Source: Eukaryota sp. TZLM1-RC
Taxonomy: Eukaryota; Protista; Metamonada: BaSk clade
Direction of reading: 5' to 3'
Length of the DNA: 64,000 nt
Assembly (NCBI GenBank): GCA_040285825.1
Contig: JAUPSS010000003.1
Coordinates: forward strand, 3,162,001-3,226,000
This document shows positions 8,361 through 28,420 of the stretch, piece after piece; positions within the stretch are counted from its first letter, which is position 1, and every line of letters begins with the position of its first letter. Below the pieces are notes generated by a model, which saw nothing but the letters and a program-made list of their open reading frames with translations, had not been told where the DNA came from and searched no databases. Made by a program: the position numbers and the translations under genes.

Positions 8361-8717
8361 ATGTCATCAAAGAAGCAACAATCTCAAAACCTCCAATTCT
8401 ACGAAGGTGGAACTATTCTTCCATTTAACCTGGGCAAATGTCCAAAGGGAGGATGTTTGATCGATATGAACAACCAGTCGATAGCCAAGCATGGTTTAAG
8501 CCCTGAAGAAAGAGAACGATACAGAGAAGTCAAGTTTGTTGGCAAAGAAGAAGGTCCTGGTCACCACGTCTATCCAGGAGGAAGGATCTTGCCCCAGAAA
8601 TATGGTGGTGGAAAAGCACCCCCTGGTGGAGTTGATGTAGATGAAGAAGGCAACATCACTATTCTAGATGCTGAGAAGGCTCGACAAGCCGGCTATGAAT
8701 TTGAAGAAGCTGAATAG
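8361..8717 (+). CDS. Hypothetical Gly-rich protein with two internal repeats (118 aa)
   Basis: Clean ORF followed by AATAAA. Repeats YEGGTILP..LGKCPKGG..ID and YPGGRILP..GGKAPPGG.DVD. Confidence 0.65.
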   Translation: MSSKKQQSQNLQFYEGGTILPFNLGKCPKGGCLIDMNNQSIAKHGLSPEERERYREVKFVGKEEGPGHHVYPGGRILPQKYGGGKAPPGGVDVDEEGNITILDAEKARQAGYEFEEAE

Positions 8718-8778
8718 ATGTAAATAAATAAATGTTGAAAGAATGAAAATTTAAAATATAGGGATTTATACAAAAACT

Positions 8779-10016
8779 TTTATTAAACTTACACATTTGA
8801 CAAAATAAACTCATAACTAATGGGACAAAATTCATTGAAACACGATTTCCTCTAAAAAATCTTGATCTGCTTGCTGTCTAGCTAAAGCTTCTCTAATTCG
8901 ATTGAAAAACCAAGGCAATCTATTAATAATGGCAAATTGAACACACGAGCGCCATAAAAAGATATCAAATCTTTTCATTGTCTTTTTTTGAACCATTTTT
9001 TGGAAGTCATTCAAAAAAGTTTCTGCTTCATCTGATAATTTTTCATTTATCGAAAATGGGAAAGCAATAAAAACTAGCTGTGTATTTCTATCAGCATTAG
9101 CCTCCTCAATATCTTTATCATATTTTCTATGTTTATCTTTTGTTTTAATATCAGGAGCACTCACAGGATTAAGTTTTCTTCTGTGAACCAAAGTATTATT
9201 TGCAACATTACATGAGACAAAGTCAACAACAGCTCCAGAATTATCAATCCAATCACAGTATACATCACCTCTATCATCAGAACCAAAATTATTCAGAGAA
9301 AGTGTTTCCTTCAGCAGAGGCTCTTTGATACACGATATTCTTGCAGTTTGTGCCATATTGAAAACAATGTCTCTAACAGCATTATGTAATGAAGAACGAT
9401 AAGTTATCAATTTAGAACAATTCAGCGCATAGCGCAAAGTGAGTTGAGGTGAATTCATACAAATACATTTTTCTTTTGATAGATTAATGGGGATATTCAA
9501 ATATAATCTCATTTTTGTTACAAATGCTTCATTAGTGGCACACAATCCAAATCTTCGTGGTACAATGGTTACAAAAAGTGAAGAATCTGATGACTTAATT
9601 TCACAAACACCCTTTTCCAATAACAATGAGTGAAGATCTTGATTTAAAACAGCCGAGCTGCATATATTATTATAAAGATCATTTTCATACATTCCAGTCA
9701 ATCGTTTCTGTAATGTTCGAAGAATGTACTTCAAATTTAAAGGATCCTATTCTGGAATATTGCCATTGAATGATTGGAGAAAACATGCACTCCATTTTTC
9801 TACACCAATTTTTGAAATTTCTTCATTTAATGCAAAAACAGTGGAACTTTGCGTTGTCATCAATAAATCTTCCCAAGCTGCAAATCTTTAGGAAACTCAA
9901 AGATGCATTTCTGCATCCACCAATAAAAGCACACGAAATAAGAATAGAAGCCTTCGTCCAACCTAAACCGCCATAATGTGGACTAAGATAAGCATGGTCT
10001 GGAATTTGGAACATTT
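8779..10016 (-). mobile_element. CRE/SLACS-like non-LTR retrotransposon family 1, copy A (5'-truncated; Zn knuckle + REL endonuclease)
   Basis: ORF 8832..9734: CIC...(H>Y)ALNC, RSSLHNAVRD, EP, DDRGDVYCD...VVD, KHRKY, FIAFPFS. Near-identical to 13137-14380. Confidence 0.85.
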
Positions 10017-11334: not shown

Positions 11335-11915
11335 TCATGCGCCATTAGTGAAGCTTAGTATCGAAAACGAGAAGGAACCCTTGCTGGAAAACAACCCTGC
11401 CGTTGAAAAAGTTTGGTTCTGATGATAGAGGTTATATTTACTGTGATTGGATTGATAGCTCTGAAGTTGTTGTGTAATTTGTTTCCTGTGATGTTGCAAA
11501 CGACACTTTGGTTCAAAGAAGGAAAAATTCCCTATTATTATTAATTATATAACTAATTCAAATCAGAAGAAAATACATGGAGAATGTAAAAATAATGATC
11601 TGAAAGAAGTTCATGCTGAATAAACGGAAAAATTGAATTATTAAATTATTTAAATTGAATTATTGTTTTTCTTAAGAGAATAAAGACTAGCATTAGAAGC
11701 TGAATCTTTTTTGAAGTAAAGAGAATGAAAAATGTTGATATTTGCCTTTGCCGGTCTCGAATCCATTTTTCCTTGATTAATGGATTATACCAGTATTGTT
11801 CAATTTTTTAAGTCAAGCTATAGCAAGGAAGCAAGCAGAACAAGTTTTTGTGAAGGGAAGCTTGGTTCAATGAATTTCGTCCCATCAGTTCTCTGTTTAT
11901 TTTGTTAAGTGTTGC
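11335..11915 (+). mobile_element. Degenerate family 1 CRE-like REL fragment
   Basis: TTTGGTTCTGATGATAGAGG..ACTGTGATTGGATTGAT and a 3' end TTCAATGAATTTCGTCCCATCAGTT shared with family 1; many stops. Confidence 0.7.
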
Positions 11916-13090: not shown

Positions 13091-13136
13091 GTATTTGCAT
13101 AAAAAATTGGGTCAAAGTATCAAAAAAACATATATA

Positions 13137-15112
13137 TTTATTGAATATGCACACTGAATTAAACTATTTCATAACTAATGGGACAAAATTCATTGAAACA
13201 CGATTTCCTCTAAAAAATCTTGATCTGCTTGCTGTCTAGCTAAAGCTTCTCTAATTCGATTGAAAAACCAAGGCAATCTATTAATAATGGCAAATTGAAC
13301 ACAAGAGCGCCATAAAAAGATATCAAATCTTTTCATTGTCTTTTTTTGAACCATTTTTTGGAAGTCATTCAAAAAAGTTTCTGCTTCATCTGATAATTTT
13401 TCATTTATCGAAAATGGGAAAGCAATAAAAACTAGCTGTGTATTTCTATCAGCATTAGCCTCCTCAATATCTTTATCATATTTTCTATGTTTATCTTTTG
13501 CTTTAATATCAGGAGCACTCACAGGATTAAGTTTTCTTCTGTGAACCAAAGTATTATTTGCAACATTACATGAGACAAAGTCAACAACAGCTCCAGAATT
13601 ATCAATCCAATCACAGTATACATCACCTCTATCATCAGAACCAAAATTATTCAGAGAGAGTGTTTCCTTCAGCAGAGGCTCTTTGATACACGATATTCTT
13701 GCAGTTTGTGCCATATTGAAAACAATGTCTCTAACAGCATTATGTAATGAAGAACGATAGGTTATCAATTTAGAACAATTCAGCGCATAGCGCAAAGTGA
13801 GTTGAGGTGAATTCATACAAATACATTTTTCTTTTGATAGATTAATGGGGATATTCAAATATAATCTCATTTTTGTTACAAATGCTTCATTAGTGGCACA
13901 CAATCCAAATCTTCGTGGTACAATGGTTACAAAAAGTGAAGAATCTGATGACTTAATTTCACAAACACCCTTTTCCAATAACAATGAGTGAAGATCTTGA
14001 TTTAAAACAGCCGAGCTGCATATATTATTATAAAGATCATTTTCATACATTCCAGTCAATCGTTTCTGTAATGTTCGAAGAGTGTATTTTAAATTTAAAG
14101 GATTCTTTTCTGGAATATTGCCATTGAATGTTTGGGGAAAACATCGATCCATTTTTCTACATCAATTTTTGAAATTTCTTCATTTAATGCAAAAGCAGTG
14201 GAACTTTGCGTTATCATCAATAAATCTTCCCAAGCTGCAAACCCTTCGGAAAACTCAAAGATTGCATTTCTGCATCCAGCAATAAAAGCACACGAAGTAA
14301 GAATAGAAGCCTTCGTCCAACCTGAACCGTCATAATGTGGACTAACATAAGCATGGTCTGGAATTTGGAACATTTTACATCCCAGTAATTGTGACAAAAC
14401 TTTTGCACGTAACTCATTAAACTTCTGAGCCAAAGACCTAGTGACAAGAGAATTTGAAGATCGAAATATATGATTGAAGTTGGAACTAAAACACAGCCTT
14501 ATAATGGTAAATTTCATATGTTTCTATCTAAAGTCATCATTCGGTCAATTTTATAGGAAATTGAGTTCAACTTTTCAAACAATTTTTGGTAATTTCATCA
14601 TTATTTCCTAAAAACGAACCCAGATGACGAATAGCATCAATTGAATATAATTTGGCTTGAATTTCAATACCATCAACTATTGTAGAAACTGCAGAATTCG
14701 ATAACAAAACACATTTTAGTGAATTAAGTCGGAGACCAATTTTGGTAAATAATTCTTTAAAACATACAGTTGCTTTTTCCACAATATTTAAATCACCTAT
14801 AAGAACAACATCATCCATATATGCAATCATTTTCAGCGAAGGAAACATCTCTTGAATTTGTAATAAAATAGGATCAATGTCCAAACAAAACAAAAGAGGT
14901 CCTAACGGATCTCCTTGCTTTACACCACTTGATGAACTCAAAATGGAATTACCAAAATGTAAATTAGAATTTGTGCTATATGTTGATTGGAAATACGGCA
15001 TTAATTCCGGCTTATATTGCAACAAAGCACCATGAATACTGCAACGACTGAGTGAATTGAATGCATTACTGAAATCTAATGACATACAAACATTGGATTC
15101 ATTTTGGCGAAA
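13137..15112 (-). mobile_element. CRE/SLACS-like non-LTR retrotransposon family 1, copy B (RT + REL, frameshifted, 5'-truncated)
   Basis: RT motifs LDFSNAFNSL, GVKQGDPLGPLLF, AYMDD, GLRLN..K, RHLG (14567..15085). Linker 14095..14517. REL ORF 13190..14152. Confidence 0.9.
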
Positions 15113-17170: not shown

Positions 17171-20017
17171 ATGATCACATCTACGTCACCACCTCAACTC
17201 AACCAATATGCACGAATTGCTGAACTTCAACTATCACCAACTGAAATGATTCCCACTACACCTCTGCGAAGAACGACAACGAACTCTTCACTAGAGGCAC
17301 TTATGTCATCAGCACGAAAAATAATGGCTGATGTTGCTGCGAGACCAAAGGTGATGGAATCGCAGTCTTGTTCTCCCTCGCCAAACGAACCTGCACTATT
17401 ACCATCTGTTTCACCGGTACAATCGCCTAACCTTACCTCACCATCAGCTACCATTAACATTACACCAACGTCAAGAGTTTTAGTACATTCACCCAGTGGT
17501 CCAGAGTTTACCCTCTATTCAACCATCGTTCCAAGCGATGCGTCTACCAGGAATGAAATAGCTCAAGTCTCTCTAGCAAGCACTATACCCCCAAAACCAA
17601 TCAAACCCCCAAAACCATCGGCGATTGTGTCGGGTAACTATGACGGAGTTGAGTATGTTGGACATGGAAACAATTTCCAAGACAAAAATTTACAATTGAA
17701 ATCATTGGAGTTTTCAAGATTTTCTGAATTAGATTTAATGCAACACCATGACTCTGCAGCTCCAATTTCAGAAATCCAAAAGGAAGTTCAGTGTAATCAA
17801 ACATTGTTTGAGTCTGCTAATGTCAATTACGCTGATACAGTATCTCCAATGGCCAATCAATTCGACGCAATCAATTCTGACACCATTGTTGATTTGAATC
17901 ATTGCTCATCTTTAGCTCAAAGTGAGTTTCAACCAAATAAACCAGCTGAATGCATTCAATCTAATCAAAGCAAAGAGATTGGTCAACTTTGCATTGGTGA
18001 ATCATGCCATAATTCACTCTCAAATAGTCAAAACTCAAATTTAGGTGCACCAATGGAGGGTGAAATGACTAACAAAGATTATTCATATCACATCACCAAT
18101 CAAGATGACGTGATGGATGATTGTGGAATTGTGGATAGTGATTTCGTCTCTGAAGCTGCGCTCAACAGTCGAAAAGCTAGTATTGATGTCACTGAAGCAA
18201 CTGATGAAACTGGTATTGAAGTAAACAACAACGAAGAAGAACTTCCTGAACACATTGAAGGCCACAGCGTGACCACTGCTGTTGAATTAGAAGAATTAGA
18301 AGAAGATAAAAGCACTATCCAGGACAACAATAGTCACAGCAATTGCCAGCAGATGGAAACTGAAATTCAACCATTTACACCAGTTCATTTCCCAGGAATC
18401 CAAGAGGAAACCAATTATAATCCAAAACTGATTGATTCTGGTGCTAGCATCGAAACTGGTTCAATTGTTGATTTCTGTTCCCGTCTGATTGATTTTGAAA
18501 CTCATTCATCTCAGGGTAAACAATTAAACCATTTAATTACTGATGAACCGTGTTTTGAATCTACAAAATTGAGAAACTCATCAGATGGTGTACCAATGGA
18601 GGACGAAAACAGGAAAACAGATCACGTTTATCACGTCACCAATCAAGATGACGTGATGGATGATTGTGGAATTGTGGATAGTGATTTCGTCTCTGAAGAT
18701 GTGTTCAACAGTCGAAAAGCTAGTATTGATGTCACTGAAGCAACTGATGAAACTGGTATTGAAGTAAACAACAACGAAGAAGAACTTCCTGAACACATTG
18801 AAGGCCACAGCGTGACCACTGCTGTTGAATTAGAAGAATTAGAAGAAGATAAAAGCACTATCCAGGACAACAATAGTCACAGCAATTGCCAGCAGATGGA
18901 AACTGAAATTCAACCATTTACACCAGTTCATTTCCCAGGAATCCAAGAGGAAACCAATTATAATCCAAAACTGATTGATTCTGGTACTAGCATCGAAACT
19001 GGTTCAATTGTTGATTTCTGTTCCCCTCTGATTGATTTTGAAACTCATTCATCTCAGGGTAAACAATTAAACCATTTAATTACTGATGAATCGTGTTTTG
19101 AATCTACAAAATTGAGAAACTCATCAGATGGTGTACCAATGGAGGACGAAAACAGGAAAACAGATCACGTTTATCACGTCACCAATCAAGATGACGTGAT
19201 GGATGATGATCAATATGTTTCCTGTCAGGCGGGGGGTGAAGAACCTGAAGACATTATGTATCCAAATGATGAACTCGCTGAAAATGCTGTTTTATATAAA
19301 ACTGACGTGTTAGTGAACACTGTTTCTTCTGATTCAAATTCAACCAAAACTACTGTGAATTGTGTTGAAAATGAATCAGTGAATGATGAATACTTGATCT
19401 ATGATGATACTGGTACACCAGTAGATAAACAATTAACAGTGTCAGAAGTTCCCAATCAGGCAATTTCTAAGGAAAATTATACAGGTAATTCCCAAGATCA
19501 AGAGTCAGGAACTATCCCCGAGGTCACATATGTATCAAGTGAACCATCACACCCCTCCCAAGAGGAAGTTCAAAGTGAAAATATTGATTCCACACTAGAA
19601 TTGGTGGATAAGGTAGTACCCAACTCTTTTGATGTGGTGAAACGTTTTCTAAATAGGGAAAAACTGTCCAGTGAGAACCACATGTCGAATTACATTTTGA
19701 ACAAAAATGAATATAATTTAATAACCAAAGTGTACTTCAACTCTAAAGAAATGAGTAAAAGAACATTTGAGCAGGAAATTGTTTTGTTATTCAAACAATG
19801 TTTTGGCGTTCCATCACCAGAAAAGTTGCCTTATAGATGGCCGGGAAGAGAAGTTCCCGTACAGAACTTGTTGCAGGGAAAGTGTTCAAGAGATGTGAAG
19901 GAGCTGGAAAGGGACTTAGTCTTTAGCTCAGATCAGAAGCCTTTTTTGAATCATCGGAAAAGAACTCAAGCAGGGTTGCATTCTGTACAAAATAAGCGTG
20001 TTAGGCTTATTTATTGA
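17171..20017 (+). CDS. Large acidic low-complexity protein (948 aa) with an internal 181-aa tandem duplication
   Basis: Long intact ORF, S/P/T-rich N-terminus, D/E-rich middle, basic C-terminal end; no known domain recognised. Confidence 0.75.
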   Translation: MITSTSPPQLNQYARIAELQLSPTEMIPTTPLRRTTTNSSLEALMSSARKIMADVAARPKVMESQSCSPSPNEPALLPSVSPVQSPNLTSPSATINITPTSRVLVHSPSGPEFTLYSTIVPSDASTRNEIAQVSLASTIPPKPIKPPKPSAIVSGNYDGVEYVGHGNNFQDKNLQLKSLEFSRFSELDLMQHHDSAAPISEIQKEVQCNQTLFESANVNYADTVSPMANQFDAINSDTIVDLNHCSSLAQSEFQPNKPAECIQSNQSKEIGQLCIGESCHNSLSNSQNSNLGAPMEGEMTNKDYSYHITNQDDVMDDCGIVDSDFVSEAALNSRKASIDVTEATDETGIEVNNNEEELPEHIEGHSVTTAVELEELEEDKSTIQDNNSHSNCQQMETEIQPFTPVHFPGIQEETNYNPKLIDSGASIETGSIVDFCSRLIDFETHSSQGKQLNHLITDEPCFESTKLRNSSDGVPMEDENRKTDHVYHVTNQDDVMDDCGIVDSDFVSEDVFNSRKASIDVTEATDETGIEVNNNEEELPEHIEGHSVTTAVELEELEEDKSTIQDNNSHSNCQQMETEIQPFTPVHFPGIQEETNYNPKLIDSGTSIETGSIVDFCSPLIDFETHSSQGKQLNHLITDESCFESTKLRNSSDGVPMEDENRKTDHVYHVTNQDDVMDDDQYVSCQAGGEEPEDIMYPNDELAENAVLYKTDVLVNTVSSDSNSTKTTVNCVENESVNDEYLIYDDTGTPVDKQLTVSEVPNQAISKENYTGNSQDQESGTIPEVTYVSSEPSHPSQEEVQSENIDSTLELVDKVVPNSFDVVKRFLNREKLSSENHMSNYILNKNEYNLITKVYFNSKEMSKRTFEQEIVLLFKQCFGVPSPEKLPYRWPGREVPVQNLLQGKCSRDVKELERDLVFSSDQKPFLNHRKRTQAGLHSVQNKRVRLIY
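18050..19207 (+). repeat. 543-bp near-perfect tandem duplication within a CDS
   Basis: ACCAATCAAGATGACGTGATGGATGA occurs at 18095, 18638 and 19181 (period 543). Confidence 0.95.
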
Positions 20018-20339
20018 CTTTTTTGATGTATTTACTAAATTTACATATATTTTAAGCATTTTTTGGTTGATATTGTTTGCTGTTGAAGAAATCTTGTGCG
20101 GCAATTCATCGACATACATAATATTATTAGAGGGTATTTTTGGTAACTGGTAATTAATGCTTTTTTAGTGATATTTTATATATTCAATATAAACAATCTC
20201 AATCAAACACTATGTTCAAGCAAAAGAAACCAGAAAGTTGCCAACGTATTATTTTCTCAATTAATCAACTATGATGGGATCAACAACGCAATTTTCAACA
20301 CTTTTCGTCACATTGGTTTTGGAAAAGTTTTCCATACAG

Positions 20340-21221
20340 GCTGTTTTAAATCAAGATCTTCACTCATTGTTGTTGGAAAAGGGTGTTTGTGAAAATCAGT
20401 CATCAGATTCTTCACTGTTTGTAACCATTGTACCACGAAGATTTGGATTGTGTGCCACTAATGAAGCATTTGTAACAAAAATGAGATTATATTTGAACAT
20501 CCCCATTAACCAATTATTATCAAAAGAAAAATGTATTTGTTCGAATTCACCACAACTCACTTTGCGCCATGCTCTGAATTGCTCTCAATTGATAACTTAT
20601 CGTTCTTCATTACATGATGCTGTTAGAGACACTGTTTTCAATATGGCACAAACTGCAAGAATATCGTGTATCAAAGAGCCCCTGCTGAAGGAAACACTTT
20701 CTCTGAATAATTTTGGTTCTGATGATAGAGGTGATGTATACTGTGATTGGATTGATAATTCTGAAGCTATTGTTGACTTTGTCTCATGTAATGTTGCAAA
20801 TGATACTTTGGTTCACAGAAGAAAACTTAATCCGGTGGCTGCTCTGGATTTCAAAGCAAAAGAGAAACATAGAAAATATGATAAAGATATTGAAGAGGCA
20901 AATGTCGATAGAAATACACAGCTGGTTTTTATTGCTTTCCCATTTTCGATAAATGGAAGATTATCAGTTGAAGCAGAAACTTTTTTGGATGACTTCCAAA
21001 AAATGGTGCAAGAAAAAACAATGAAAAAATTTGATATCTTTTTATGGCGCTCTCGTGTTCAATTTGCCATTGATTAATAGATTACCTCGGTTTTTCAATC
21101 GAATAAGAGAAGCTTTAGCTAGACAGCAAGCAGATCAAGATTTTGTAGAGGAAATCTTGGTTCAATGATAGTCGTCCCATTAGTTATGAGTTAATTTAAT
21201 TAAGTGTGTAAATTTAATAAA
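20340..21221 (+). mobile_element. CRE-like family 1, copy C (5'-truncated REL region)
   Basis: ORF 20271..21077 has an intact CCHC (CICSN..RHALNC), HDAVRD, DRGD..D, KEKHRKY, FSINGRL. A +1 G near 21072 truncates it. 3' UTR is shared with copies A and B. Confidence 0.88.
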
Positions 21222-21331
21222 TACATTATTTTTTAGACCTATTTTTTCCAAGTTACATTAATTTCACAAACGGTAATGATTATGGTAAATTATTCTTACA
21301 TACAGCTTGCTTCCAATTGAAATATCCGTTT

Positions 21332-21645
21332 CTATATCAAAATGAGTAGAGAGGCTATGTGGGCATGGGAAGAGAGGACGACAGAAGTTGTTTGAGATCC
21401 AGGTGTCCACGAGTAGACAGAATTGGATATAGAGAAGACTAAAACTCGCTTCACCCATATCATGTGACTGATCGGTCCAGGAAGAGGAGGACCAGTGTAG
21501 AGTATGTGTAATCGATCTGTGGAGTAAACAATGAAGGAATGTTCAACTGCCGCAGCAATCATAGATGAGTTGCCTTGGGTATGAAGTGCCAGTGGACCAG
21601 TGGCAACAGCCCCATGTGTTCGTAAAGGTGCATATAAAGGTTCGT
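21332..21645 (-). pseudogene. UTP21: N-terminal fragment of UTP21/WDR36
   Basis: LYAPLRTHGAVATGPLAL...IAAAVEHSFIVYSTDRLHILYTGPPLPGPISHM matches the first WD blades of Utp21 (LF.PfR.lG.vs...p...F..Yd...L). It ends after ~100 codons. Confidence 0.6.
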
Positions 21646-21975
21646 AGGTTAAACGTTTTGAAAAACTCCACAAATAATTTCGTTGGTCAAAATATGCATC
21701 CACAAAAGGAGAACAAGGATAACGAGGTTACGGACTCAGTTCCCACCTCCTTCTTCAACCTGTTGTTCAAAGAACAGCCGAGTACTTCTTCCCGAACTCC
21801 TCAGTCGGGAACAGTCATCCTGTTTTACAGGAATAAATGGAAGGTCAGAGCCTCGATTTCTTATCGAAATCGTCGTTCTGATTCTTCTGTGGGGGTAGAG
21901 TATTGCACTTTTCCGAGTCATTATGTGAGTCATGATATGGGTGCTGTTGAATCAGCAATGGTGCTAATCACCTTG

Positions 21976-22400
21976 GATATGGGATGCTCTTCTTCTTCGT
22001 GTTTTGTTTTGAATTGTTACTTTGATGTTATTGAGTTTGTTGTTTTTCATGGTTTAGCTATTTGTACTGTAGATATGGGATGTTGTTCTGGTTTGTGTTT
22101 TGTTTTACATTGTTGTTACTTTGATGTTTTTGATTTTGTTGATGTTTTTGGTTTAGGTACTTGTACTTTGAATATGGGATGTTTTTCTTGTTTGTGTTTT
22201 GTTTTGAAAGGTTGTCTTGATGTTTTTGGGTTTGTTGTTTTTCGTGGTTTACGTACTTGTACTGTGGATGTGGGATGTTTCTTTTGTATATGTTTTGTTT
22301 TACATTGTTGTTTTGATGCTTATGAGTTTGTTCATTTTTGTGGTTTAGATTCTTGCACTTAGATATGGGATGTTGTGTCTTAAATTGTTATTTTGATAAT
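21976..22400 (+). repeat. Coding minisatellite, ~96-nt unit (DMGC...CFVL.C.FD..FV.F.GL..CT), four full units plus one partial
   Basis: Units start at 21976, 22072, 22171, 22267 and 22362 (96, 99, 96, 95 nt). Confidence 0.9.
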
Positions 22401-22454
22401 GTTGAGTTTGATTATTATGTTTATAATTTATCTTTTCAATCCAGAAGCTGCCAA

Positions 22455-22526
22455 CATCTTCTATCAACAAACCCATTTACTGTTGATTTAACAATTGATG
22501 GAGATGTTGAAGCAAATCCTGGTCCC
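22455..22526 (+). other. 2A (StopGo) ribosomal-skipping peptide
   Basis: HLLSTNPFTVDLTIDGDVEANPG|P is an exact D(V/I)ExNPGP consensus with upstream DLT.DG. Skip site between 22523 and 22524. Confidence 0.85.
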
Positions 22527-22929
22527 AGAAAGAGAAGATCTAATTTTGAATCAACTCCTCCATCAAAAATTATTAGAAATGCGATTTTTGACCAACAAAC
22601 ATCAAAGCGTAAGCTGAAAAAACAACAAAATGCACTGAACCGAGAAATTTGTATGGAGAATACAATGTTGAATATTGAGAACAGGCAGATTTTGACAAAA
22701 AAACCATTGAAACCGAATAAGGTCAAAAAAAATTGAGCCAAGTCGTAGTGGTTTCAAGCCTGATCCATTGATTCAATTCAAATCAATGACCTCAAATCAA
22801 CATCTTCCCATTGTTATGTGCTTTGATCTTGAAACCTATCAGGATGGTCATCTTTATCAAAATCATGATGGCTAATTTCTCCCTCCTGACGAGATCATCA
22901 ACAAAAAGAGAAAAGAGGGTGCAAATCTT

Positions 22930-25827
22930 TTGAAAAAGAAAACTGATGAGCAAATGGGTGAGTGGATTTCAGATCAAAAAGTGTTTTTAATTTCGATTGT
23001 TATTGGTAAGTTTGATCGCCATAATTTCTTTTTGGAGAGTAAATATTCACTTTTATTGAGAATGAGTCCTCAAATCAGATTACCAGACATTGATATGGAT
23101 ATTCAGGCAGAAATATTCTCTGACGAAAAAATCTTGCTTCGTAGGTTTATAAACCTTATTGGTAATCATCAACCCCATTGTTTTCTTAATCACAATTTAA
23201 TGCAGTTTGATTTACAGGTTTTAAGAAATAGATTAAATTATTTTGATTTACCATTTCCCACTTTTCCAGATGATACAGCAATTGATGTACTCAATCAACT
23301 TTCACCAAGATGGAGAGAAGTTGTCATCAGGGAAAATGGCTTTTTTCTTTTAGATACTTGGGTTTTTGCCAAAAAATTCATAAAAATACCCTACGGACAT
23401 AGGTTAGGCAATCTGGCATATAAAATGATAAATGAAAAGAAAATCAAACTTCATCAGGAATTTTCCCATATTTTGCCAATTGATTGTTTAGCTACTTCTC
23501 CTCTGATACAAAATTCGATTCAATATGGGTTTCATGATTGTATCCTTTGTCTGAAACTTTTCGTGCTGTTTCAGAAAGACAAATTTATTTTATCATCTTA
23601 TAAAACCATTCGAGCAACCGTCAACTCAATGGTTAAACATTCGAATGTGATACTCAAATTGAGAGAAACTGCTTTAAAATTTCAACAGTTACGTATTCAC
23701 ACCACTTGTTGCTTAAAGCTGTATTTACAGTCTTGTTTTGAACGTAATTTGTCATTACCACGAATATCTGCCCACTTATATGAATCATTAATGGCCAGAA
23801 TTCGTTATATTTCAGCTGAGTATTATGGGCAAGAAATGGTGAAACCAAAGAGTGCATTTCCACAGGATTTTGAAAACTTTGTTTATGGTGAAGGAGATTG
23901 TAGATTATCGACCACCTTTGAACAACAAAAGTTGAACAAAACATTGAGTTATGTAGACCATTTGAGATATAGGCCTGAGTTTTTTCCACGATTTCCAACT
24001 GATGGATTCAGTAGACCACCTGGGTATATGGCCCCAGTAATGTTTGCCAATTTTGAGAATAACTTGAAATTGAATTATGAAAAACATATTAATCGATTTA
24101 TTAATGTTTTTTTTGACAAACCAGATGTGGAAAATGTGTTAGCAGAAATGTATAAGCTGGGTGGATACTCAACGCCATTATCTACTATAATTTCACTATA
24201 TAGATTTAGGCTTCGTCAATTCAAAAACTTGTTTCTAGTTGATGATAGAGATTGCTTGAGTTCTTTGTTTCATCATCCTGAAAATATTTCAGACCTTCTG
24301 AATGATGAATTTTTCGATTTATGTGAACATCATGATATAAGAGGTAATGAACTTAGAGACATATTTGAAGGTCTTATTGAGCCTTGTACTTGCCAAATTG
24401 AGAATTTGGTCACTGACGAGAATTTAGTTGATAACATATTTCCAGTGGATATACATTTTCTTGCAGACACTATGGAAACAGATCCTCAAATATTCCTAAA
24501 ACCAGCAATTACAATTGCCCAATATATCTCCAGTGGAGAGAAAAAACCATATCATATTTCTCCTGTTTCAACCACTGTCGGCCCTGGATATTTTCCCATT
24601 GATACAAGAACAATATGGACAATTATTAGACAAACATTGATGGACGATTTATCATCTACACAGACGCTGAAAATGTCCAATACACTAGCCCAAGTTACGA
24701 AATTCAAACCACCTCAGCAATTTGACTTTTGGTCTAATATTCTCGATTTAAATCAACCAATGTTCAAACAGAAGAGCTATAAATTCAACAACATTATCCA
24801 CACAGATGGATTTAATATTGCAGTAGAATTTGTTCGTCGGGATTTACAAGGTCAGAAATGTAAGCCAGACAACAAGGCCAGTATTTCGAATTTATATATT
24901 GATGATGTTGATGTTGATACTGTTCAAGGCAAACGAATTGTTGTTTGTGATCCTGGAAAACGTGATTTATTGTATTTTGGGAGCAGAAAGACTGATCAAG
25001 AATTAGCCATGGTACCTGAACATGAAACTGAACAGCAAAGAAATAGTCGGGTGATGAATCAAGACAAGAAGTACAAATGGTTGAGAATGACTCAGATGTC
25101 CTGGTCTTTGAAAAGTAGGATGAATGAAAAGCAAAAACGATGGGCGATAAAGTATACTGAGGTAGATTGCGACAGGAACCAAATGATCGAGTCTAACGAA
25201 ATGACAATTGAAGATGCAAACACCGAATTATCCGCGTTTGCTGCCAATTCAGCAACTGTTATAAATTTTTCCAACTTTGTGATTGCCAGACTTCGGCAAG
25301 TTTTTTTGACAATTGACTTTTATAGTCTTGACTTGTGGAGCATTCATAAAATGCAAGCTTTTATTCACAAGCAAAGGACTGAAAGTTGGTTGTTAAAAAA
25401 CCTTGTTCAGCAATTTGGCAATCCAAAAGACACTTTAATACTAATGGGTGATTATGGTAAAAAAGGTTCCAAGAATTTGAAACATCAGAGACCTACTAGA
25501 GGAATTGGATGGATTCAATTTCTGAAAAGAAATGGATTTGAAGTATTGATGATTAATGAAGCTTTCACTTCAGCAAAATGTCCTGTGTGTTTTGAAAAGG
25601 TTGCTACGTTTTTGAGAGTCGCAAATCCCAGATTCTATAGAAGAGAAAAGACTCCAGTTACTACATGTCATGGTTTATTAGCTTGTAACAGTGAGAGTTG
25701 CAAACTCAGTAACAAAGGCTCAACAAAGCTTTTCAATAGAAATAAGCTGGCTTGTCTGAATATGTTTGCAATTGCTGAAGCCAGAATGAGTGGTAATGAA
25801 AGACCTCAGTATCTGTGTAGTAGATAG
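22930..25827 (+). CDS. PolB-type 3'-5' exonuclease fused to Fanzor1 RuvC nuclease (965-aa open portion)
   Basis: ExoII HNLMQFDL and ExoIII YGFHD (ExoI FDLET lies in frame just upstream). Fanzor1 motifs YKTIRAT, NFENNLK.NYEKH, SPV.T...YFPIDT, IHTDG, RuvC-I VVCDPG, GDY, RuvC-II INEAFTSAKCPVC, CHGLLAC..C, RuvC-III FNRNKLACLN, RPQYL. Confidence 0.88.
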   Translation: MKKKTDEQMGEWISDQKVFLISIVIGKFDRHNFFLESKYSLLLRMSPQIRLPDIDMDIQAEIFSDEKILLRRFINLIGNHQPHCFLNHNLMQFDLQVLRNRLNYFDLPFPTFPDDTAIDVLNQLSPRWREVVIRENGFFLLDTWVFAKKFIKIPYGHRLGNLAYKMINEKKIKLHQEFSHILPIDCLATSPLIQNSIQYGFHDCILCLKLFVLFQKDKFILSSYKTIRATVNSMVKHSNVILKLRETALKFQQLRIHTTCCLKLYLQSCFERNLSLPRISAHLYESLMARIRYISAEYYGQEMVKPKSAFPQDFENFVYGEGDCRLSTTFEQQKLNKTLSYVDHLRYRPEFFPRFPTDGFSRPPGYMAPVMFANFENNLKLNYEKHINRFINVFFDKPDVENVLAEMYKLGGYSTPLSTIISLYRFRLRQFKNLFLVDDRDCLSSLFHHPENISDLLNDEFFDLCEHHDIRGNELRDIFEGLIEPCTCQIENLVTDENLVDNIFPVDIHFLADTMETDPQIFLKPAITIAQYISSGEKKPYHISPVSTTVGPGYFPIDTRTIWTIIRQTLMDDLSSTQTLKMSNTLAQVTKFKPPQQFDFWSNILDLNQPMFKQKSYKFNNIIHTDGFNIAVEFVRRDLQGQKCKPDNKASISNLYIDDVDVDTVQGKRIVVCDPGKRDLLYFGSRKTDQELAMVPEHETEQQRNSRVMNQDKKYKWLRMTQMSWSLKSRMNEKQKRWAIKYTEVDCDRNQMIESNEMTIEDANTELSAFAANSATVINFSNFVIARLRQVFLTIDFYSLDLWSIHKMQAFIHKQRTESWLLKNLVQQFGNPKDTLILMGDYGKKGSKNLKHQRPTRGIGWIQFLKRNGFEVLMINEAFTSAKCPVCFEKVATFLRVANPRFYRREKTPVTTCHGLLACNSESCKLSNKGSTKLFNRNKLACLNMFAIAEARMSGNERPQYLCSR

Positions 25828-25828
25828 T

Positions 25829-25955
25829 TGTAATTATTCCACACGAAAATTGATCGTGTATTTATGGGAATTTCCCACCAACGGTATCACTTTCAGGTAT
25901 CACCAAGCAACTTTGTCCTGGAAGAAAACCAGACAGAAATAAACAGGTGATTACA
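25829..25955 (+). ncRNA. Candidate Fanzor omegaRNA scaffold
   Basis: Nested hairpins directly after the stop: ACACGA/TCGTGT, TGGGA/TCCCA, ATCACC/GGTGAT enclosing TGTC(C)TGG/CCAGACA, and TGTAAT/ATTACA. Confidence 0.5.
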
Positions 25956-25968
25956 TTAAGCAAAGCTA

Positions 25969-26352
25969 ATGGAGTTGGATTTGTCTGACAACCGTCCATC
26001 TCCTTTCACAGGATGGTACGGGTATTTTCTTCCAGATGTTGACACTGCCACTGTGGGCGAGTTTCAGGCTTATGGAGGAGCAATATTGAACCAATTGCCT
26101 CAACCTGACATCAATCCCAACGTTTTGGTGTTTGGTGTTCAGTATCCAGATGACTTCCCTCCACATCTGCTCCTTGTCTTGCCTACTTTTGTTAGCCACT
26201 GTGTCCGTGTGGGAGAGGTGACCGAACTTGATCGTTTTCTTGTTCCACCTTTCAAGTATACTGATGTTGACATGAATAATTTATCAGATCTATTGTTGTT
26301 GGTACCACCAATGCCTGATGATGTTCAAATAGGAGAACCTCAACCAATTTAG
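25969..26352 (+). CDS. Small BRCT-like protein (127 aa)
   Basis: PFTGWYGYF...AYGGAIL...VLPTFVSHCVRVGEVTELDRFL resembles the BRCT pattern (F.G..f, GG.v, v.p.Wi.dc....l....y); the conserved Trp is Phe here. Confidence 0.45.
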   Translation: MELDLSDNRPSPFTGWYGYFLPDVDTATVGEFQAYGGAILNQLPQPDINPNVLVFGVQYPDDFPPHLLLVLPTFVSHCVRVGEVTELDRFLVPPFKYTDVDMNNLSDLLLLVPPMPDDVQIGEPQPI

Positions 26353-26947
26353 CATTGTTCTGTCTCATTTTTGCTTGTAAATATTTTGTAAAGTTCTTTT
26401 AAGTTTAGTTAGTTTTTTATCAAACTATAAAATACTTTTACAACCTGTTATTGACAAATAAGTTGCATTAGGCGATGAAAGATCAGATTCTTGTATTTGC
26501 TCGTATTCCCCTTCAACAGAAAGTTTTCGTTGCATTGAACAAAGAAGTTGAAAAAAACTGATCATTATATAATAGCTGATGTATATAAAGACTAACAATT
26601 TCAAGTCGCAATTTGTACTTTAAATAAATAGTATTACTGAATAAGCACAAGAGGATTGGAACCAATAAGAGATTGGAACTTTGAGTACTTATAACACAGG
26701 ATATCAAGCTTGATAAGGCCATATTAAGTCACAACAATAGAATGGAGATACAAGTTCTTAAATATTGTATTGATTCTTGAAGAATCCAATAAATGTTGTC
26801 AATAAAAACGACGATTTAAATAGGAAGAAGTACTAGAGAGAACTCACAATACAATCAAATCAACCAATCAGATTTGATTCAACATCAATTGAACTGTAGA
26901 CAAATTATTCCTCGCTGTAGATCTATTTCTTAGTCCATCTCTTTGTC

Positions 26948-27976
26948 ATGAAACCTGTCATCCTTGTTCTGCTAGCTGTAGTAGCTGTTGTCAGCGCATA
27001 CGACCCCTTTTCTCCAAATCCTGACTTATTTGGTTTCGAGCATCCCTCCATAGGGAAAGCAGAAAATATCGAAATGTTTGATGACGAAGAGCAAATTCAA
27101 TCTGACCAATTAAGTGTATTCGATGCTCAATGGTTCAATAGTCTGAAAACCTCAAGCAGCTGGCCCTTTCCTTCAGTAGATCCCCAAATGTTGGACGGCT
27201 TTTTGGAAGAAGAAGAAGACGACGAAGAAGGAACAGAAGCTCTTGAAGATAATGAAGGATGTGACGATGATAGCGAGGAATGTGATAATAATTCATGCCA
27301 ACCAATATATGAAGGACAAAGTGATGGTGTCTGTGATGAAGATGGTTATGATGATGAGGACTTTGACGATGAAGAACCCCTTCCAATGCTGGATGTGCAG
27401 ACTTTTTATCAATCCATTTACTCACAGTTTATCCACCTTCACAATAGCCAACCTACACAGAGGAAACCATCCAAGCCAACCTCTCCTCCTCCAAGTAACC
27501 CCACATCACCCCCAGTTCCTGCTTTTGATGAATGTTCCAGTAAGGATGATCCTCCGGTACTTGTAATACAGGCAAGTTCACTCCCTGAAGGAAAACTGCA
27601 CGAAAAGTCCCTTCTCCATGCCGGTATATGCTATGTAAAGTCAAAAACATCTGCTTCAGCTCCATGCGTTCTGAATGGCAAACTCACCACATGTGATTCT
27701 GATGGTAATGTAGATCAGGAATCTGCTCTTGATTTTGAACTATGTCCTGCTGTGCAAGCAATCAGTATGGATCTCACTGAAGGTTCTGATGCTATTGCAG
27801 GCGCTTGGGATATTGACGACAAACCAATAGGAGCAGTTGAATCTGCTAACGTAGAAGGGATATTTGGTATCTCTGCTAAACCATGTTCCCAGGTGAAAAG
27901 GTTTGCAGTAGCTGCAGAGGGACTGCTGATTGAGAAGATTCGAGTGTGGAAGTATTGTGATTTCTATTGTAGGTGA
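26948..27976 (+). CDS. Secreted acidic protein with Pro-rich linker and Cys-containing C-terminal domain
   Basis: Signal peptide MKPVILVLLAVVAVVSA, D/E tract, PTSPPP repeats; 342 aa. Confidence 0.8.
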   Translation: MKPVILVLLAVVAVVSAYDPFSPNPDLFGFEHPSIGKAENIEMFDDEEQIQSDQLSVFDAQWFNSLKTSSSWPFPSVDPQMLDGFLEEEEDDEEGTEALEDNEGCDDDSEECDNNSCQPIYEGQSDGVCDEDGYDDEDFDDEEPLPMLDVQTFYQSIYSQFIHLHNSQPTQRKPSKPTSPPPSNPTSPPVPAFDECSSKDDPPVLVIQASSLPEGKLHEKSLLHAGICYVKSKTSASAPCVLNGKLTTCDSDGNVDQESALDFELCPAVQAISMDLTEGSDAIAGAWDIDDKPIGAVESANVEGIFGISAKPCSQVKRFAVAAEGLLIEKIRVWKYCDFYCR

Positions 27977-28095: not shown

Positions 28096-28420
28096 TTATT
28101 GAGGTCTTTTAAAAGCTAGGGGTCTAGTGTTCAAAAAGTACTTGCTTACTGCAATCTCCCACTGGTTTCTCGATGCAGAGATATCTCTTGACCAAACCAT
28201 CCCACATTCTGGACATGCAAAATAGGCTTTAGACCTTTTCCTTTCTCCATTGTCTATGAAGTAAAGGTCTTCATGGAAAACTTTGCAACAGTTCACTTTG
28301 CCTTATGTATAGTATTCATCGCCATCCTTCACGGTTGGAAATCCAGCCTAACCAAATAGTCACTTCACAATTTTCAGTTATGCTTTTGATTTTCTGGACA
28401 AAATGGCTGAATCTCGGATA
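28096..28420 (-). pseudogene. Fanzor/TnpB C-terminal relic
   Basis: GDEYYT*GKVNCC...FACPECGMVWSRDISASRN...TRPLAF gives RuvC-II, Zn ribbon and RuvC-III; in-frame stops upstream. Confidence 0.8.

What the first reader, a model, noticed from the sequence alone, without database searches (positions are those of the whole stretch)
21694..26352. Candidate new system: 2A-processed polyprotein releasing an NLS-exonuclease-Fanzor fusion, with omegaRNA candidate and BRCT-like neighbour
Seen: three consecutive + strand ORF pieces form one ~1,377-codon frame from ATG 21694. This needs a 1-nt loss at ~22360 (shown by one 95-nt repeat unit among 96/99-nt units), a compensating extra A in the A8 run 22725-22732, and read-through of TAA 22873. 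Domain order is Cys-rich hydrophobic repeats, 2A (DVEANPG|P), basic NLS (PRKRR...SKRKLKK), PolB-type DEDDy exonuclease, full Fanzor1, then a hairpin cluster and a BRCT-like ORF. Known: Fanzors are omegaRNA-guided RuvC nucleases of eukaryotic transposons and giant viruses; 2A peptides occur in RNA viruses and some non-LTR elements. I know of no described Fanzor carrying both a proofreading-type exonuclease and a 2A leader. Inference: 2A skipping would release a ~1,100-aa nuclear RNA-guided 'cut and trim' enzyme, a natural counterpart of engineered Cas-exonuclease fusions. This copy looks decayed, or carries read errors.
Basis: partly seen in the sequence, partly recalled or inferred. Interest (0 to 1): 0.95.

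Follow-up and report, generated by a model that had tools for sequence, protein, structure and literature searches.

The report
Fanzor nuclease fused to proofreading exonuclease
The window holds a broken copy of a mobile element from the protist Skoliomonas whose single long gene joins a ribosome-skipping 2A peptide, a nuclear import signal, a DNA-polymerase-type proofreading exonuclease and an RNA-guided Fanzor nuclease; I found this natural combination in none of the Fanzor papers I checked.

Summary
Window 21694-25877 (+) is one copy of a multicopy element of Skoliomonas litria TZLM1-RC. The order is leader, 2A (DVEANPG|P), basic NLS, family-B DEDDy exonuclease, full Fanzor1. It is supported by Pfam, PDB profile and fold searches.

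This is not chance nesting. The same architecture recurs in several families about 30-35% identical, across three Skoliomonas isolates, with uninterrupted ORFs in TZLM3-RCL. The Exo I-III and RuvC motifs are conserved. The RuvC triad is D-E-N, as in active GtFz1. dN/dS among copies is 0.2-0.5.

Two parts of the reading fail. The BRCT-like ORF lies outside the repeat unit, which ends at 25877. Any omegaRNA scaffold must also end there; a two-hairpin 3' tail is conserved in structure across three families.

Relatives add Ulp1-like proteases or a DEAH helicase after the 2A. No exonuclease-Fanzor fusion appears in the papers checked or in non-skoliomonad hits. Activity, omegaRNA and mode of mobility are untested.

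Verdict: a real new variant of Fanzor1; this copy is dead.

The parts
21694..25877 (+). One copy of the repeat unit (mobile element), about 4.2 kb, carrying three reading-frame lesions
   Evidence: blastn against paralogous loci L001-L005: all copies end at window 25877 and their 5' ends vary (21705, 22572, 22671, 23116, 23437). The 3' flanks are unrelated. Only L003 reaches the 5' end; homology starts at about the ATG.
21694..22484 (+). Pre-2A leader: Cys-rich hydrophobic coding repeats, with a 96-nt tandem array at 21976-22381. It contains the 1-nt deletion at about 22360.
   Evidence: TRF reports period 96, 4.2 copies, 78% matches. L003 has fewer units. Leaders of relatives are unrelated in sequence and range from 28 to about 235 aa.
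22485..22526 (+). 2A/StopGo-like motif DLTIDGDVEANPG|P; the predicted skip lies between codons 22521-23 and 22524-26
   Evidence: Read from the sequence. The same motif sits at the same relative place in P0177 (LLTEHGDVEANPGP), P0167 (DLTVDGDVEANPGP), P0182 (LVLDGDVEANPGP), P0164 and P0030 (DLTADGDVHKNPGP) and P0028.
22524..22785 (+). Basic linker with NLS-like clusters (PRKRR 22524-38; KRKLKK 22605-22). It contains the A8 run 22725-22732, which has one extra A.
   Evidence: Translation. P0177 has the homologous PKKRKSSVESTPPSK. N-terminal NLSs are known in Fanzors (PMC10530073).
22786..23586 (+). Family-B DNA-polymerase-type 3'-5' exonuclease domain (DEDDy): ExoI FDLET 22822-36 (D 22825-27, E 22831-33), in-frame TAA 22873-75, ExoII NHNLMQFDL 23188-23214, ExoIII YGFHDC 23524-41
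   Evidence: Pfam PF03104, E 8.5e-7, 29.1 bits against a cut-off of 23. The family profile A6 hits Pol delta 3iay at 2.7e-11 and Pol II at 2e-9 in the PDB. In Foldseek, all top 50 hits of the exonuclease model are family-B polymerases. The motifs are conserved in the family alignment.
23587..25827 (+). Full Fanzor1 moiety: RuvC-I CDPGKRD 24946-66, RuvC-II INEAFTS 25552-72, zinc-ribbon cysteines 25579-90 and 25684-701, RuvC-III NRNKLACLN 25735-61, stop TAG 25825-27
   Evidence: PDB phmmer gives PpFz1 3e-24, SpuFz1 4e-21 and GtFz1 3e-4. The AF2 model has pLDDT 80 and pTM 0.73. Foldseek gives SpuFz1 E 5e-26 with target TM 0.76, then PpFz1 and GtFz1. The D-E-N triad matches active GtFz1 (PMC11423790).
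25828..25877 (+). Non-coding 3' tail with two terminal hairpins (25841-46/25854-59 and 25865-69/25873-77), ending ...TTTCCCA. It is a candidate 3' part of an omegaRNA scaffold or a DNA-level end signal.
   Evidence: The MFE fold shows two hairpins. The same stop / hairpin 1 / hairpin 2 / end layout, with different sequences, occurs in L006/L012 and L010. There the hairpin-defined ends coincide with the homology ends.

Best explanation
Window 21694-25877 is a degenerate copy of a Skoliomonas-specific Fanzor1 mobile element. The element has one long gene encoding a polyprotein: a variable leader, a 2A StopGo site, a basic NLS linker, a DNA-polymerase-delta-like DEDDy 3'-5' exonuclease, and a complete Fanzor1 RNA-guided RuvC nuclease.

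Shown:
- The domain order.
- Its recurrence in diverged families of three isolates.
- Conservation of all exonuclease and RuvC catalytic motifs.
- Purifying selection among copies.
- A sharp common 3' end carrying a structurally conserved two-hairpin tail.

Inferred:
- The ribosome skips at NPG|P, so the fast-evolving, repeat-expanding leader is shed. The mature enzyme then starts with Pro followed by the NLS and enters the nucleus.
- It loads an omegaRNA transcribed from the element's 3' end, with the guide read from the flank beyond 25877, and cuts matching DNA with the D-E-N RuvC site.
- The tethered exonuclease then chews the 3' ends at the break. This could block faithful re-ligation. It could also remove the short 3' tail that has no match in an element-bearing template, a job the Pol delta proofreading exonuclease does in yeast break repair (from my own knowledge). 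Repair would then copy the element.

This copy itself is dead: two frameshifts and one stop lie upstream of an otherwise open 965-codon ORF.
For: Lesions and frames.

Exonuclease; motifs.

Fanzor1. The N at the third RuvC position is active in GtFz1, and SpuFz1 D606N is more active than wild type (PMC11423790).

Linkage in relatives:
- P0009 covers query residues 3-963 at 35% identity.
- The L007 ORF 7986-11876 is continuous, 1296 codons.
- The L009 and L008 genes are continuous.
- The L006 ORF 7899-9707 carries 2A, NLS and ExoI-III in one frame.
- L010 has 2A and Fanzor in one continuous ORF.
- P0182 has 2A, two C48 domains, exonuclease and Fanzor.

Selection: dN/dS is 0.22-0.48 over 23437-25824 and 0.31 over the exonuclease between the window and L001.

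Element ends. 3' hairpins.

Host and spread: Skoliomonas litria, with TZLM3-RCL the deepest branch of the genus.
Against: - No activity, RNA or protein data exist for any part.
- The 238-nt 3' region does not fold better than shuffles (z -0.79). The tail is no better conserved than the ORF among copies.
- No transposase, TIR or TSD was found, and many copies are 5'-truncated, so how the element moves is unknown.
- One family (P0009) has SPDP where the others have NPGP, so 2A is not universal.
- I did not verify an uninterrupted full-length ORF in the window's own genome. L006 has one frameshift hidden by an annotated 25-nt intron.
- A 3'-5' exonuclease does not by itself make the 3' overhangs that recombination needs.
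Confidence: 0.75

Rival explanations
1. The architecture is real, but the exonuclease works on RNA rather than on the cut DNA. For example it could trim the 3' end of the omegaRNA or guide to length, or degrade transcripts. DEDDy enzymes such as RNase D act on RNA (from my own knowledge).
For: The domain is conserved with an intact DEDDy set, but nothing shows its substrate. Fanzor guides are cut out of read-through transcripts of the flank, and only about 15 nt of the guide is protected by the protein (PMC11423790). A trimming activity would therefore have a use.
Against: Every sequence and fold match is to the DNA-proofreading domain of family-B polymerases (Pol delta, Pol II, Pol epsilon, RB69). 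None is to RNase D or other RNA exonucleases.
Confidence: 0.12
2. The unit is spread by reverse transcription: either passively, by the abundant RT elements of this genome, or as part of a retroelement. On this reading the 2A leader and the 5'-truncated copies are LINE-style hallmarks rather than features of a DNA transposon.
For: The 3' end is constant while the 5' ends vary. 2A leaders are otherwise known from non-LTR retrotransposons (L1Tc and APE-type elements, cited in PMC12338488). An RT-element 3' fragment lies next to or inside Fanzor copies in the window, L005, L006 and L012. P0005 and the L012 gene carry RVT_1.
Against: The unit has no RT. There is no poly(A) or simple-repeat tail, and no target-site duplications were found around the six copies. 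The RT fragment is very abundant, with six or more pieces in this 64-kb window, so adjacency may be chance. Its orientation relative to the Fanzor gene also differs between loci.
Confidence: 0.1
3. The two terminal hairpins are DNA-level recognition or termination signals for a Rep/HUH-type (Helitron-like or IS200/605-like) transposase encoded elsewhere. They are not omegaRNA structure, and the element is a non-autonomous passenger.
For: The element has no TIRs and no TSDs, is orientation-specific, and carries a hairpin at the 3' end. Fanzor1 genes are often carried by Helitrons (PMC3627910). Hairpins at the ends are typical of Rep transposons (PMC10288648).
Against: No Rep/Hel gene was seen in the unit or in the loci read. 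The ends are ...CCCA...GCCA(TA)...TTCCA and ...TTTCA, not CTRR (the CTRR Helitron end is from my own knowledge). This reading does not exclude an omegaRNA, because in known Fanzor and TnpB loci the scaffold overlaps the transposon's right end (PMC10432273).
Confidence: 0.25
4. Chance nesting or an annotation artefact: an exonuclease gene fragment, a 2A-bearing element and a Fanzor element merely lie next to each other in this window.
For: The window copy needs three repairs to read as one frame. TE nesting is common in this genome.
Against: The same order occurs in families only 27-37% identical, in three isolates, in continuous ORFs, with catalytic motifs kept and dN/dS well below 1.
Confidence: 0.02

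Closest known systems
Fanzor1 RNA-guided nucleases (SpuFz1, PpFz1, GtFz1)
   Same: The whole WED/REC/RuvC/zinc-ribbon fold matches (Foldseek E 5e-26, target TM 0.76). The RuvC D-E-N triad is identical in type to GtFz1. It has an N-terminal NLS and a multicopy genomic element with a short conserved tail after the stop codon.
   Different: About 250 aa of family-B proofreading exonuclease is fused in front, and a 2A leader lies in front of that. No inverted repeats like the 30-nt IRs of Spu-1 are present. Described Fanzors are about 600-700 aa, and the closest non-skoliomonad hits (650-790 aa) have no exonuclease domain.
Engineered Cas9/Cas12/Fanzor-exonuclease fusions (TREX2, T5 exonuclease)
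   Same: A programmable nuclease is tethered to an exonuclease so that cut ends are processed at once. The 'Fanzor AND exonuclease' papers whose titles and abstracts I saw (15 of 28) concerned genome-editing engineering and reviews, not natural fusions.
   Different: This one is natural and conserved by selection. Its exonuclease is a Pol-delta-like DEDDy domain rather than the DEDDh TREX2 or the 5'-3' T5 exonuclease (that classification is from my own knowledge). Its effect on repair outcome is unknown.
2A/StopGo leaders of non-LTR retrotransposons (L1Tc, APE-type elements) and RNA viruses
   Same: It has the D(V/I)ExNPGP motif near the N-terminus of a mobile-element ORF. This would separate a leader from the enzymes downstream (references in PMC12338488).
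   Different: It is attached to a TnpB-family nuclease gene with no reverse transcriptase in the unit. No paper in the library combined Fanzor with 2A terms.
Family-B DNA polymerase proofreading domains (Pol delta, Pol II, Pol epsilon)
   Same: Exo I/II/III motifs, a profile match (2.7e-11 to yeast Pol3) and the fold.
   Different: No polymerase palm, fingers or thumb follow. The domain is an isolated module, joined to Fanzor through a conserved LKLFxLFQ...LRxHTS linker.
[quoted passage not shown]
   Same: These are non-transposase DNA-processing enzymes carried by mobile elements (PMC3627910). Relatives of this element also carry DEAH helicase or Ulp1-like protease modules.
   Different: Here the accessory enzymes are fused in one polyprotein with an RNA-guided nuclease.

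Membership tests
Fanzor1 (eukaryotic TnpB-like RNA-guided nuclease) | Split RuvC triad: D, E, and D (or N as in GtFz1) in the conserved motifs | tested here: met
   DPGKRD, INEAFTS and NRNKLACLN are present and conserved across the family. The N variant is active in GtFz1.
Fanzor1 (eukaryotic TnpB-like RNA-guided nuclease) | Zinc-ribbon (TNB) between RuvC-II and RuvC-III | tested here: met
   CPVC...C..C is aligned to PpFz1 and SpuFz1. The Pfam Cas12f1-like_TNB hit is only weak, E 0.033.
Fanzor1 (eukaryotic TnpB-like RNA-guided nuclease) | Overall WED/REC/RuvC fold of solved Fanzor1 structures | tested here: met
   AF2 pLDDT 80. Foldseek gives SpuFz1 E 5e-26 with TM 0.76 (target-normalised), PpFz1 0.62-0.65 and GtFz1 0.65.
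Fanzor1 (eukaryotic TnpB-like RNA-guided nuclease) | omegaRNA encoded at the 3' end of the ORF and the right end of the element, with the guide from the flank | tested here: inconclusive
   A two-hairpin tail is conserved in structure in three families. However, there is no Rfam hit, no stability signal over 238 nt and no expression data.
Fanzor1 (eukaryotic TnpB-like RNA-guided nuclease) | RNA-guided, TAM-dependent DNA cleavage | not testable with these tools
   Needs biochemistry.
Family-B DNA polymerase 3'-5' exonuclease domain (DEDDy) | Exo I (DxE), Exo II (Nx2-3[F/Y]D) and Exo III (Yx3D) motifs | tested here: met
   FDLET, NHNLMQFDL and YGFHDC in the window, conserved in all relatives that cover them.
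Family-B DNA polymerase 3'-5' exonuclease domain (DEDDy) | Profile and fold match to PolB exonuclease domains | tested here: met
   PF03104 matches above its cut-off in the window and in seven relatives. The PDB profile hit to Pol delta is 2.7e-11. Foldseek top 50 are all PolB.
Family-B DNA polymerase (whole enzyme) | Polymerase palm/fingers/thumb after the exonuclease domain | tested here: not met
   The sequence after ExoIII is Fanzor1, and there is no polymerase-domain Pfam hit. It is therefore an exonuclease module, not a polymerase.
2A / StopGo peptide | C-terminal D(V/I)ExNPGP motif in frame between two coding parts | tested here: met
   DVEANPGP at 22503-22526. It is in frame with the exonuclease in L006 (one ORF) and in the annotated proteins P0028, P0030, P0164 and P0182. 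In the window itself the frame is broken downstream, by the extra A.
2A / StopGo peptide | Co-translational peptide-bond skipping | not testable with these tools
   Needs a reporter assay.
BRCT domain (for the neighbour ORF 25969-26352) | Significant profile or sequence match to BRCT | tested here: not met
   No Pfam hit at E up to 0.1. The best relevant PDB hit is Rap1 BRCT at E 0.85. The ORF lies outside the repeat unit.
Non-LTR retrotransposon (considered for the carrier) | Reverse transcriptase in the unit; poly(A) or simple-repeat tail; TSDs | tested here: not met
   No RT in 21694-25877. There is no tail repeat and no TSDs. Only the 5'-truncation pattern fits.
TIR DNA transposon such as Spu-1 (considered for the carrier) | Terminal inverted repeats and TSDs | tested here: not met
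   No inverted match of the 3' end anywhere in the window.

The most novel reading that the evidence does not exclude
Skoliomonads carry a self-contained class of RNA-guided mobile element. Its Fanzor is one module of a 2A-initiated polyprotein that can also include Ulp1-like proteases or a DEAH helicase. Its fused Pol-delta-like proofreading exonuclease is what makes RNA-guided cutting lead to copying: it removes the short non-homologous 3' tail left by the distal RuvC cut, so that the broken end can prime on an element-bearing template. The 5'-truncated copies would then be aborted copying events that started from the 3' end.
Probability: 0.2. Interest if true: 0.9.

Novelty: new variant of a known kind. 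Interest (0 to 1): 0.8.

Why it matters
Fanzors are the only known eukaryotic RNA-guided DNA nucleases, and what they do for their elements is still unclear. A lineage in which selection has kept a proofreading-type exonuclease welded to Fanzor points to end processing after the cut as a functional step. It offers a natural experiment on how the cut is turned into element spread.

It is also a ready-made, compact 'nuclease plus exonuclease' design. Genome engineers build this artificially to bias repair outcomes.

The 2A leader, with protease or helicase modules in relatives, shows that TnpB-family genes can sit inside virus-like polyproteins. This widens the known contexts of both 2A and Fanzor.

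Tried and rejected
- TIRs and TSDs: none were found for the window copy or its five paralogs.
- Stability of the 238-nt 3' region: not different from shuffles.
- Extra conservation of the tail among copies: none.
- Rfam on 21000-27000: no hit.
- MAFFT alignment of the 3' tails across families (A9) is out of structural register by two columns. I therefore did no pair counting and rely on the separate folds.
With A8 it found no relatives in viral or JGI metagenome contigs. This test is weak because only one peptide pattern was scanned.
- The second AF2 job used P0009:335-660, which by my mistake starts after ExoI (residue 324). That model is mediocre (pLDDT 64) but still matches only PolB exonuclease domains.
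- One empty align_proteins call and one badly posed paper search gave nothing.
- P0177 at first looked intact. It is two ORFs bridged by an annotated 25-nt intron, which I read as a frameshift because L012 has 24 nt there, in frame.
- Chance nesting was considered and rejected.
Full report
Where the window comes from. The window is an intron-poor eukaryotic chromosome piece with ordinary host genes, including a Nup133/155-like nucleoporin, WASH complex subunit, tubulin-tyrosine ligase, ankyrin protein and trehalose-phosphate synthase. The closest proteins to the long ORF are all from 'Eukaryota sp. TZLM1-RC'. An exact look-up places the window on JAUPSS010000003.1 of GCA_040285825.1. TZLM1-RC is Skoliomonas litria, a free-living anaerobic metamonad from soda lakes (PMC11603281). 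Nothing here is human or from a pathogen.

The observation.
- Frame 1 is open from ATG 21694 to TAG 22360.
- Frame 0 then carries ...DLTIDGDVEANPGPRKRRSNF...SKRKLKK...KPNKVKKN* up to 22736.
- Frame 1 resumes with KKIEPSRSGFKPDPLIQFKSMTSNQHLPIVMCFDLETYQDGHLYQNHDG, stops at TAA 22873, and continues in the same frame into the 965-codon ORF 22930-25827.

All three lesions are supported.
- The tandem 96-nt units read ACT GTA GAT ATG GGA at their junctions. The last junction reads ACT-TAGATATGGGA, so one base is missing at about 22360.
- The A run 22725-32 is one base shorter in L005 and L003, while L001 shares A8. The annotated paralog proteins P0028 and P0048 read through it as VKKIEP / VKIIDP.
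- TAA 22873 is CAA in three paralogous loci, and Q in P0003 and P0008.

Domains. The 965-aa ORF matches Pfam DNA_pol_B_exo1 above its curated cut-off (29.1 bits against 23). Relatives score up to 58 bits. A profile of the family's exonuclease region hits yeast and human Pol delta (2.7e-11), E. coli Pol II (2e-9), and archaeal, phage and herpesvirus PolBs in the PDB. The alignment runs from Exo II to Exo III. A structure model of that region matches only family-B polymerases among its top 50 Foldseek hits. Exo I (FDLET), Exo II (NHNLMQFDL) and Exo III (YGFHDC) are all present, and they are conserved in relatives that share only about 30% identity. No polymerase domain follows.

From about residue 220 the protein is a complete Fanzor1.
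- phmmer finds PpFz1 (3e-24), SpuFz1 (4e-21) and GtFz1.
- The AlphaFold model (pLDDT 80, pTM 0.73) superposes on SpuFz1 with E 5e-26 and target-normalised TM 0.76. PpFz1 and GtFz1 come next, and Cas12f-type proteins rank far below.
- The RuvC motifs are DPGKRD, INEAFTS and NRNKLACLN.
- The third catalytic position is N in every family member. That looked like an inactivating change. However, GtFz1 has the same N658 and is active, and SpuFz1 D606N is more active than wild type (PMC11423790).

Is the fusion real? An exhaustive phmmer search of 1.84 billion representatives gave 1242 hits.
- The only hits that cover the exonuclease part are from Skoliomonas isolates TZLM1-RC, TZLM3-RCL and GEM-RC.
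- P0009 (1281 aa, 35% identity) aligns to residues 3-963 in one stretch.
- Several families 27-37% identical to the window protein keep the order exonuclease then Fanzor.
- Uninterrupted ORFs exist in TZLM3-RCL: L007 7986-11876 (1296 codons), L008, L009 (2065 codons) and L010.
- In the window's own genome, the P0177 locus (L006) carries MLTET...LLTEHGDVEANPGPYCQPKKRK..., ExoI-III and the start of Fanzor in one ORF (7899-9707). The rest lies in a second ORF.
- The annotated 25-nt 'intron' that joins those two ORFs is 24 nt and in frame in the 98%-identical copy L012. I therefore read it as one frameshift.

The 2A motif sits at the same relative position in the following proteins.

| Protein | 2A motif |
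|---|---|
| window | DLTIDGDVEANPGP |
| P0177 | LLTEHGDVEANPGP |
| P0167 | DLTVDGDVEANPGP |
| P0182 | LVLDGDVEANPGP |
| P0164, P0030 | DLTADGDVHKNPGP |
| P0028 (same family as the window) | (E)DVEANPGP |

In the P0009 family the aligned position reads EFTASPDP followed by AKKKK, which looks like a decayed 2A. The stretch after the 2A is basic and partly homologous between families (RKRRSNFESTPPSK against KKRKSSVESTPPSK). N-terminal NLSs are an established Fanzor feature (PMC10530073).

Among six copies of the window's family, pairwise dN/dS is 0.22-0.48 over the Fanzor part. It is 0.31 over the exonuclease between the window and L001. So most of the divergence arose while the protein was under selection. 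Chance nesting is excluded.

The element and its ends. blastn against five paralogous loci shows one sharp common 3' end at window 25877 (...TATGGGAATTTCCCA), 50 nt after the stop. The flanks beyond it are unrelated. The 5' ends differ: 21705, 22572, 22671, 23116 and 23437. The single copy that reaches the 5' region (L003) becomes alignable at about the ATG 21694, and a host gene lies about 100-150 bp beyond.

The BRCT-like ORF 25969-26352 is therefore outside the unit, and no other copy has it as a neighbour. Its BRCT character is also not significant. I found no terminal inverted repeats, no target-site duplications and no poly(A), and no transposase inside the unit. How the element moves is open. 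The pattern of a constant 3' end with ragged 5' ends fits target-primed reverse transcription in trans, abortive copying from the 3' end, or rolling-circle-type elements. I could not discriminate between these.

omegaRNA question. In known Fanzor loci the scaffold overlaps the ORF's 3' end and the element's right end, and the guide is the flank (PMC10432273). Here the guide would start at 25878.

The 50-nt tail folds into two hairpins (25841-59 and 25865-77). The tails of two other families, L006/L012 and L010, have quite different sequences but the same layout:
- stop codon;
- 11-14 nt;
- a 6-7-bp hairpin;
- 4-5 nt;
- a 4-5-bp hairpin that ends at, or within two bases of, the element's end.

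In those families the hairpin-defined ends coincide with the independent homology boundaries. The differences between L006 and L012 fall in a loop or turn G-C into G-U. The P0009 family also ends in an 8-bp hairpin.

This is good evidence for a functional terminal structure, but not for whether it acts as RNA or as DNA. The longer 238-nt region is not unusually stable, the tail is not extra-conserved among copies, and Rfam has nothing.

Mechanism. The following is shown:
- a conserved coding unit with intact catalytic motifs for two nucleases;
- a canonical 2A;
- a basic N-terminus after the 2A;
- a structured 3' end.

The following is inferred. StopGo skipping sheds the leader, which is hypervariable, often hydrophobic and carries expanding tandem repeats in two families. 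The Pro-initiated NLS-exonuclease-Fanzor protein enters the nucleus. It binds an omegaRNA from the 3' end, cuts guide-matching DNA and processes the 3' ends in cis.

The exonuclease is most like that of Pol delta. Pol delta's proofreading activity removes short non-homologous 3' tails during yeast break repair (from my own knowledge). One attractive reading is therefore that the fusion adapts a distal RuvC cut for copying of the element from a homologous template. A simpler reading is that it prevents faithful re-ligation. Action on RNA is a minor rival.

Relatives show that the polyprotein is modular. P0182 has two Ulp1-like C48 protease domains between the 2A and the basic linker (Pfam 2e-17). 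P0167 has one, at E 0.0018, below Pfam's cut-off. P0158 (L009) has a divergent DEAH helicase joined in frame at the same junction (EFTEAVFPSITKR...). That helicase is multicopy in the genome and only about 30% identical, over a quarter of its length, to cellular DEAH helicases.

Novelty. I searched the paper library for Fanzor together with exonuclease, 2A, NPGP and Skoliomonas. I also read six key papers for these terms:
- Bao and Jurka 2013 (PMC3627910);
- Saito 2023 (PMC10432273);
- Jiang 2023 (PMC10530073);
- the Yoon 2023 preprint;
- Xu 2024 (PMC11423790);
- Altae-Tran 2023 (PMC10691335).

None mentions an exonuclease domain in a Fanzor or TnpB, or a 2A leader. 'Exonuclease' occurs there only in engineered fusions. 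The longest non-skoliomonad Fanzor1 hits (650-790 aa) have no exonuclease domain. Pattern scans of IMG/VR and JGI metagenomes found no relatives. Pfam's DUF8286 already covers part of the Fanzor moiety in these proteins but assigns no function.

I therefore rate this a new variant of a known kind. It is a Fanzor1 by every testable criterion, with a new conserved domain architecture and a lineage-restricted distribution.

Limits.
- The eukaryotic assemblies themselves could not be searched, so copy numbers, full 5' ends and possible partner transposases are unknown.
- All functional statements are inferences from sequence.
- The window copy itself is non-functional unless the two indels are assembly errors. 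Even then the TAA remains.

Noticed in passing
window 20026-21226 (+); also 8779-9531, 13136-13889, 11375-11912, 50874-51983: An abundant repeat carries a 268-aa ORF (20271-21077). The ORF resembles the C-terminal CxC...H...C / RHD...D...D part of the RT-bearing proteins P0005 and L012 1433-4390 (RVT_1). Twenty-nt inverted repeats lie at 20026-45 and 21207-26. A piece of this repeat lies next to or inside Fanzor copies in the window, L005, L006 and L012, in differing orientations. This could be chance, given its density, or an insertion preference.
   Followed up: partly
window 28096-28296 (-): A second TnpB/Fanzor-like remnant (FACPECGMVWSRDISASRNQW) lies 2.2 kb downstream on the other strand. 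Its Cas12f1-like TNB hit is weak (E 1e-4, below the cut-off). It belongs to a different family, with the canonical RD motif.
   Followed up: partly
L009 3816-12084 (TZLM3-RCL): This is a long form of a related element. A 695-aa ORF1 has 87-nt tandem repeats and Cys/His knuckles. It is followed by a 2065-codon ORF with a divergent DEAH helicase fused in frame to the basic linker, exonuclease and Fanzor. The helicase is multicopy (P0185 cluster, 4 members). L007 and L008 look like internally deleted derivatives.
   Followed up: partly
P0182, P0167 (L010 6001-9579), TZLM3-RCL: Ulp1-like C48 cysteine protease domains lie directly after the 2A: two in P0182 and one in P0167. In P0167 the protease replaces the Exo I segment. 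A protease inside the polyprotein suggests further processing.
   Followed up: partly
P0009 residues about 145-160 (L007): Where the other families have DVEANPGP, this family reads EFTASPDP followed by AKKKK. This looks like a decayed 2A kept in place.
   Followed up: no
L006 9669-9693 against L012: The annotated 25-nt GT-AG 'intron' in the P0177 gene model is a near-palindrome. It is 24 nt and in frame in the 98%-identical copy L012. The gene model probably hides a frameshift.
   Followed up: yes
window 17171-20017 (+): A 948-aa ORF with no Pfam match contains a long internal duplication of roughly 180 aa, with two near-identical blocks (...TDHVYHVTNQDDVMDDCGIVDSDFVSE...). It lies upstream on the same strand as the two repeats and the BRCT-like ORF.
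   Followed up: no
window 25969-26352 (+): A 127-aa ORF, annotated as a gene at NCBI, starts 92 nt after the element's end. It has no Pfam hit and only a non-significant similarity to the Rap1 BRCT domain. It is not linked to other copies of the element.
   Followed up: partly
window 21681-21687 and 25877-25883: CGTTGGT just upstream of the ATG is the reverse complement of ACCAACG across the 3' junction. It is a 7-nt match with E about 2.7, so probably chance.
   Followed up: no
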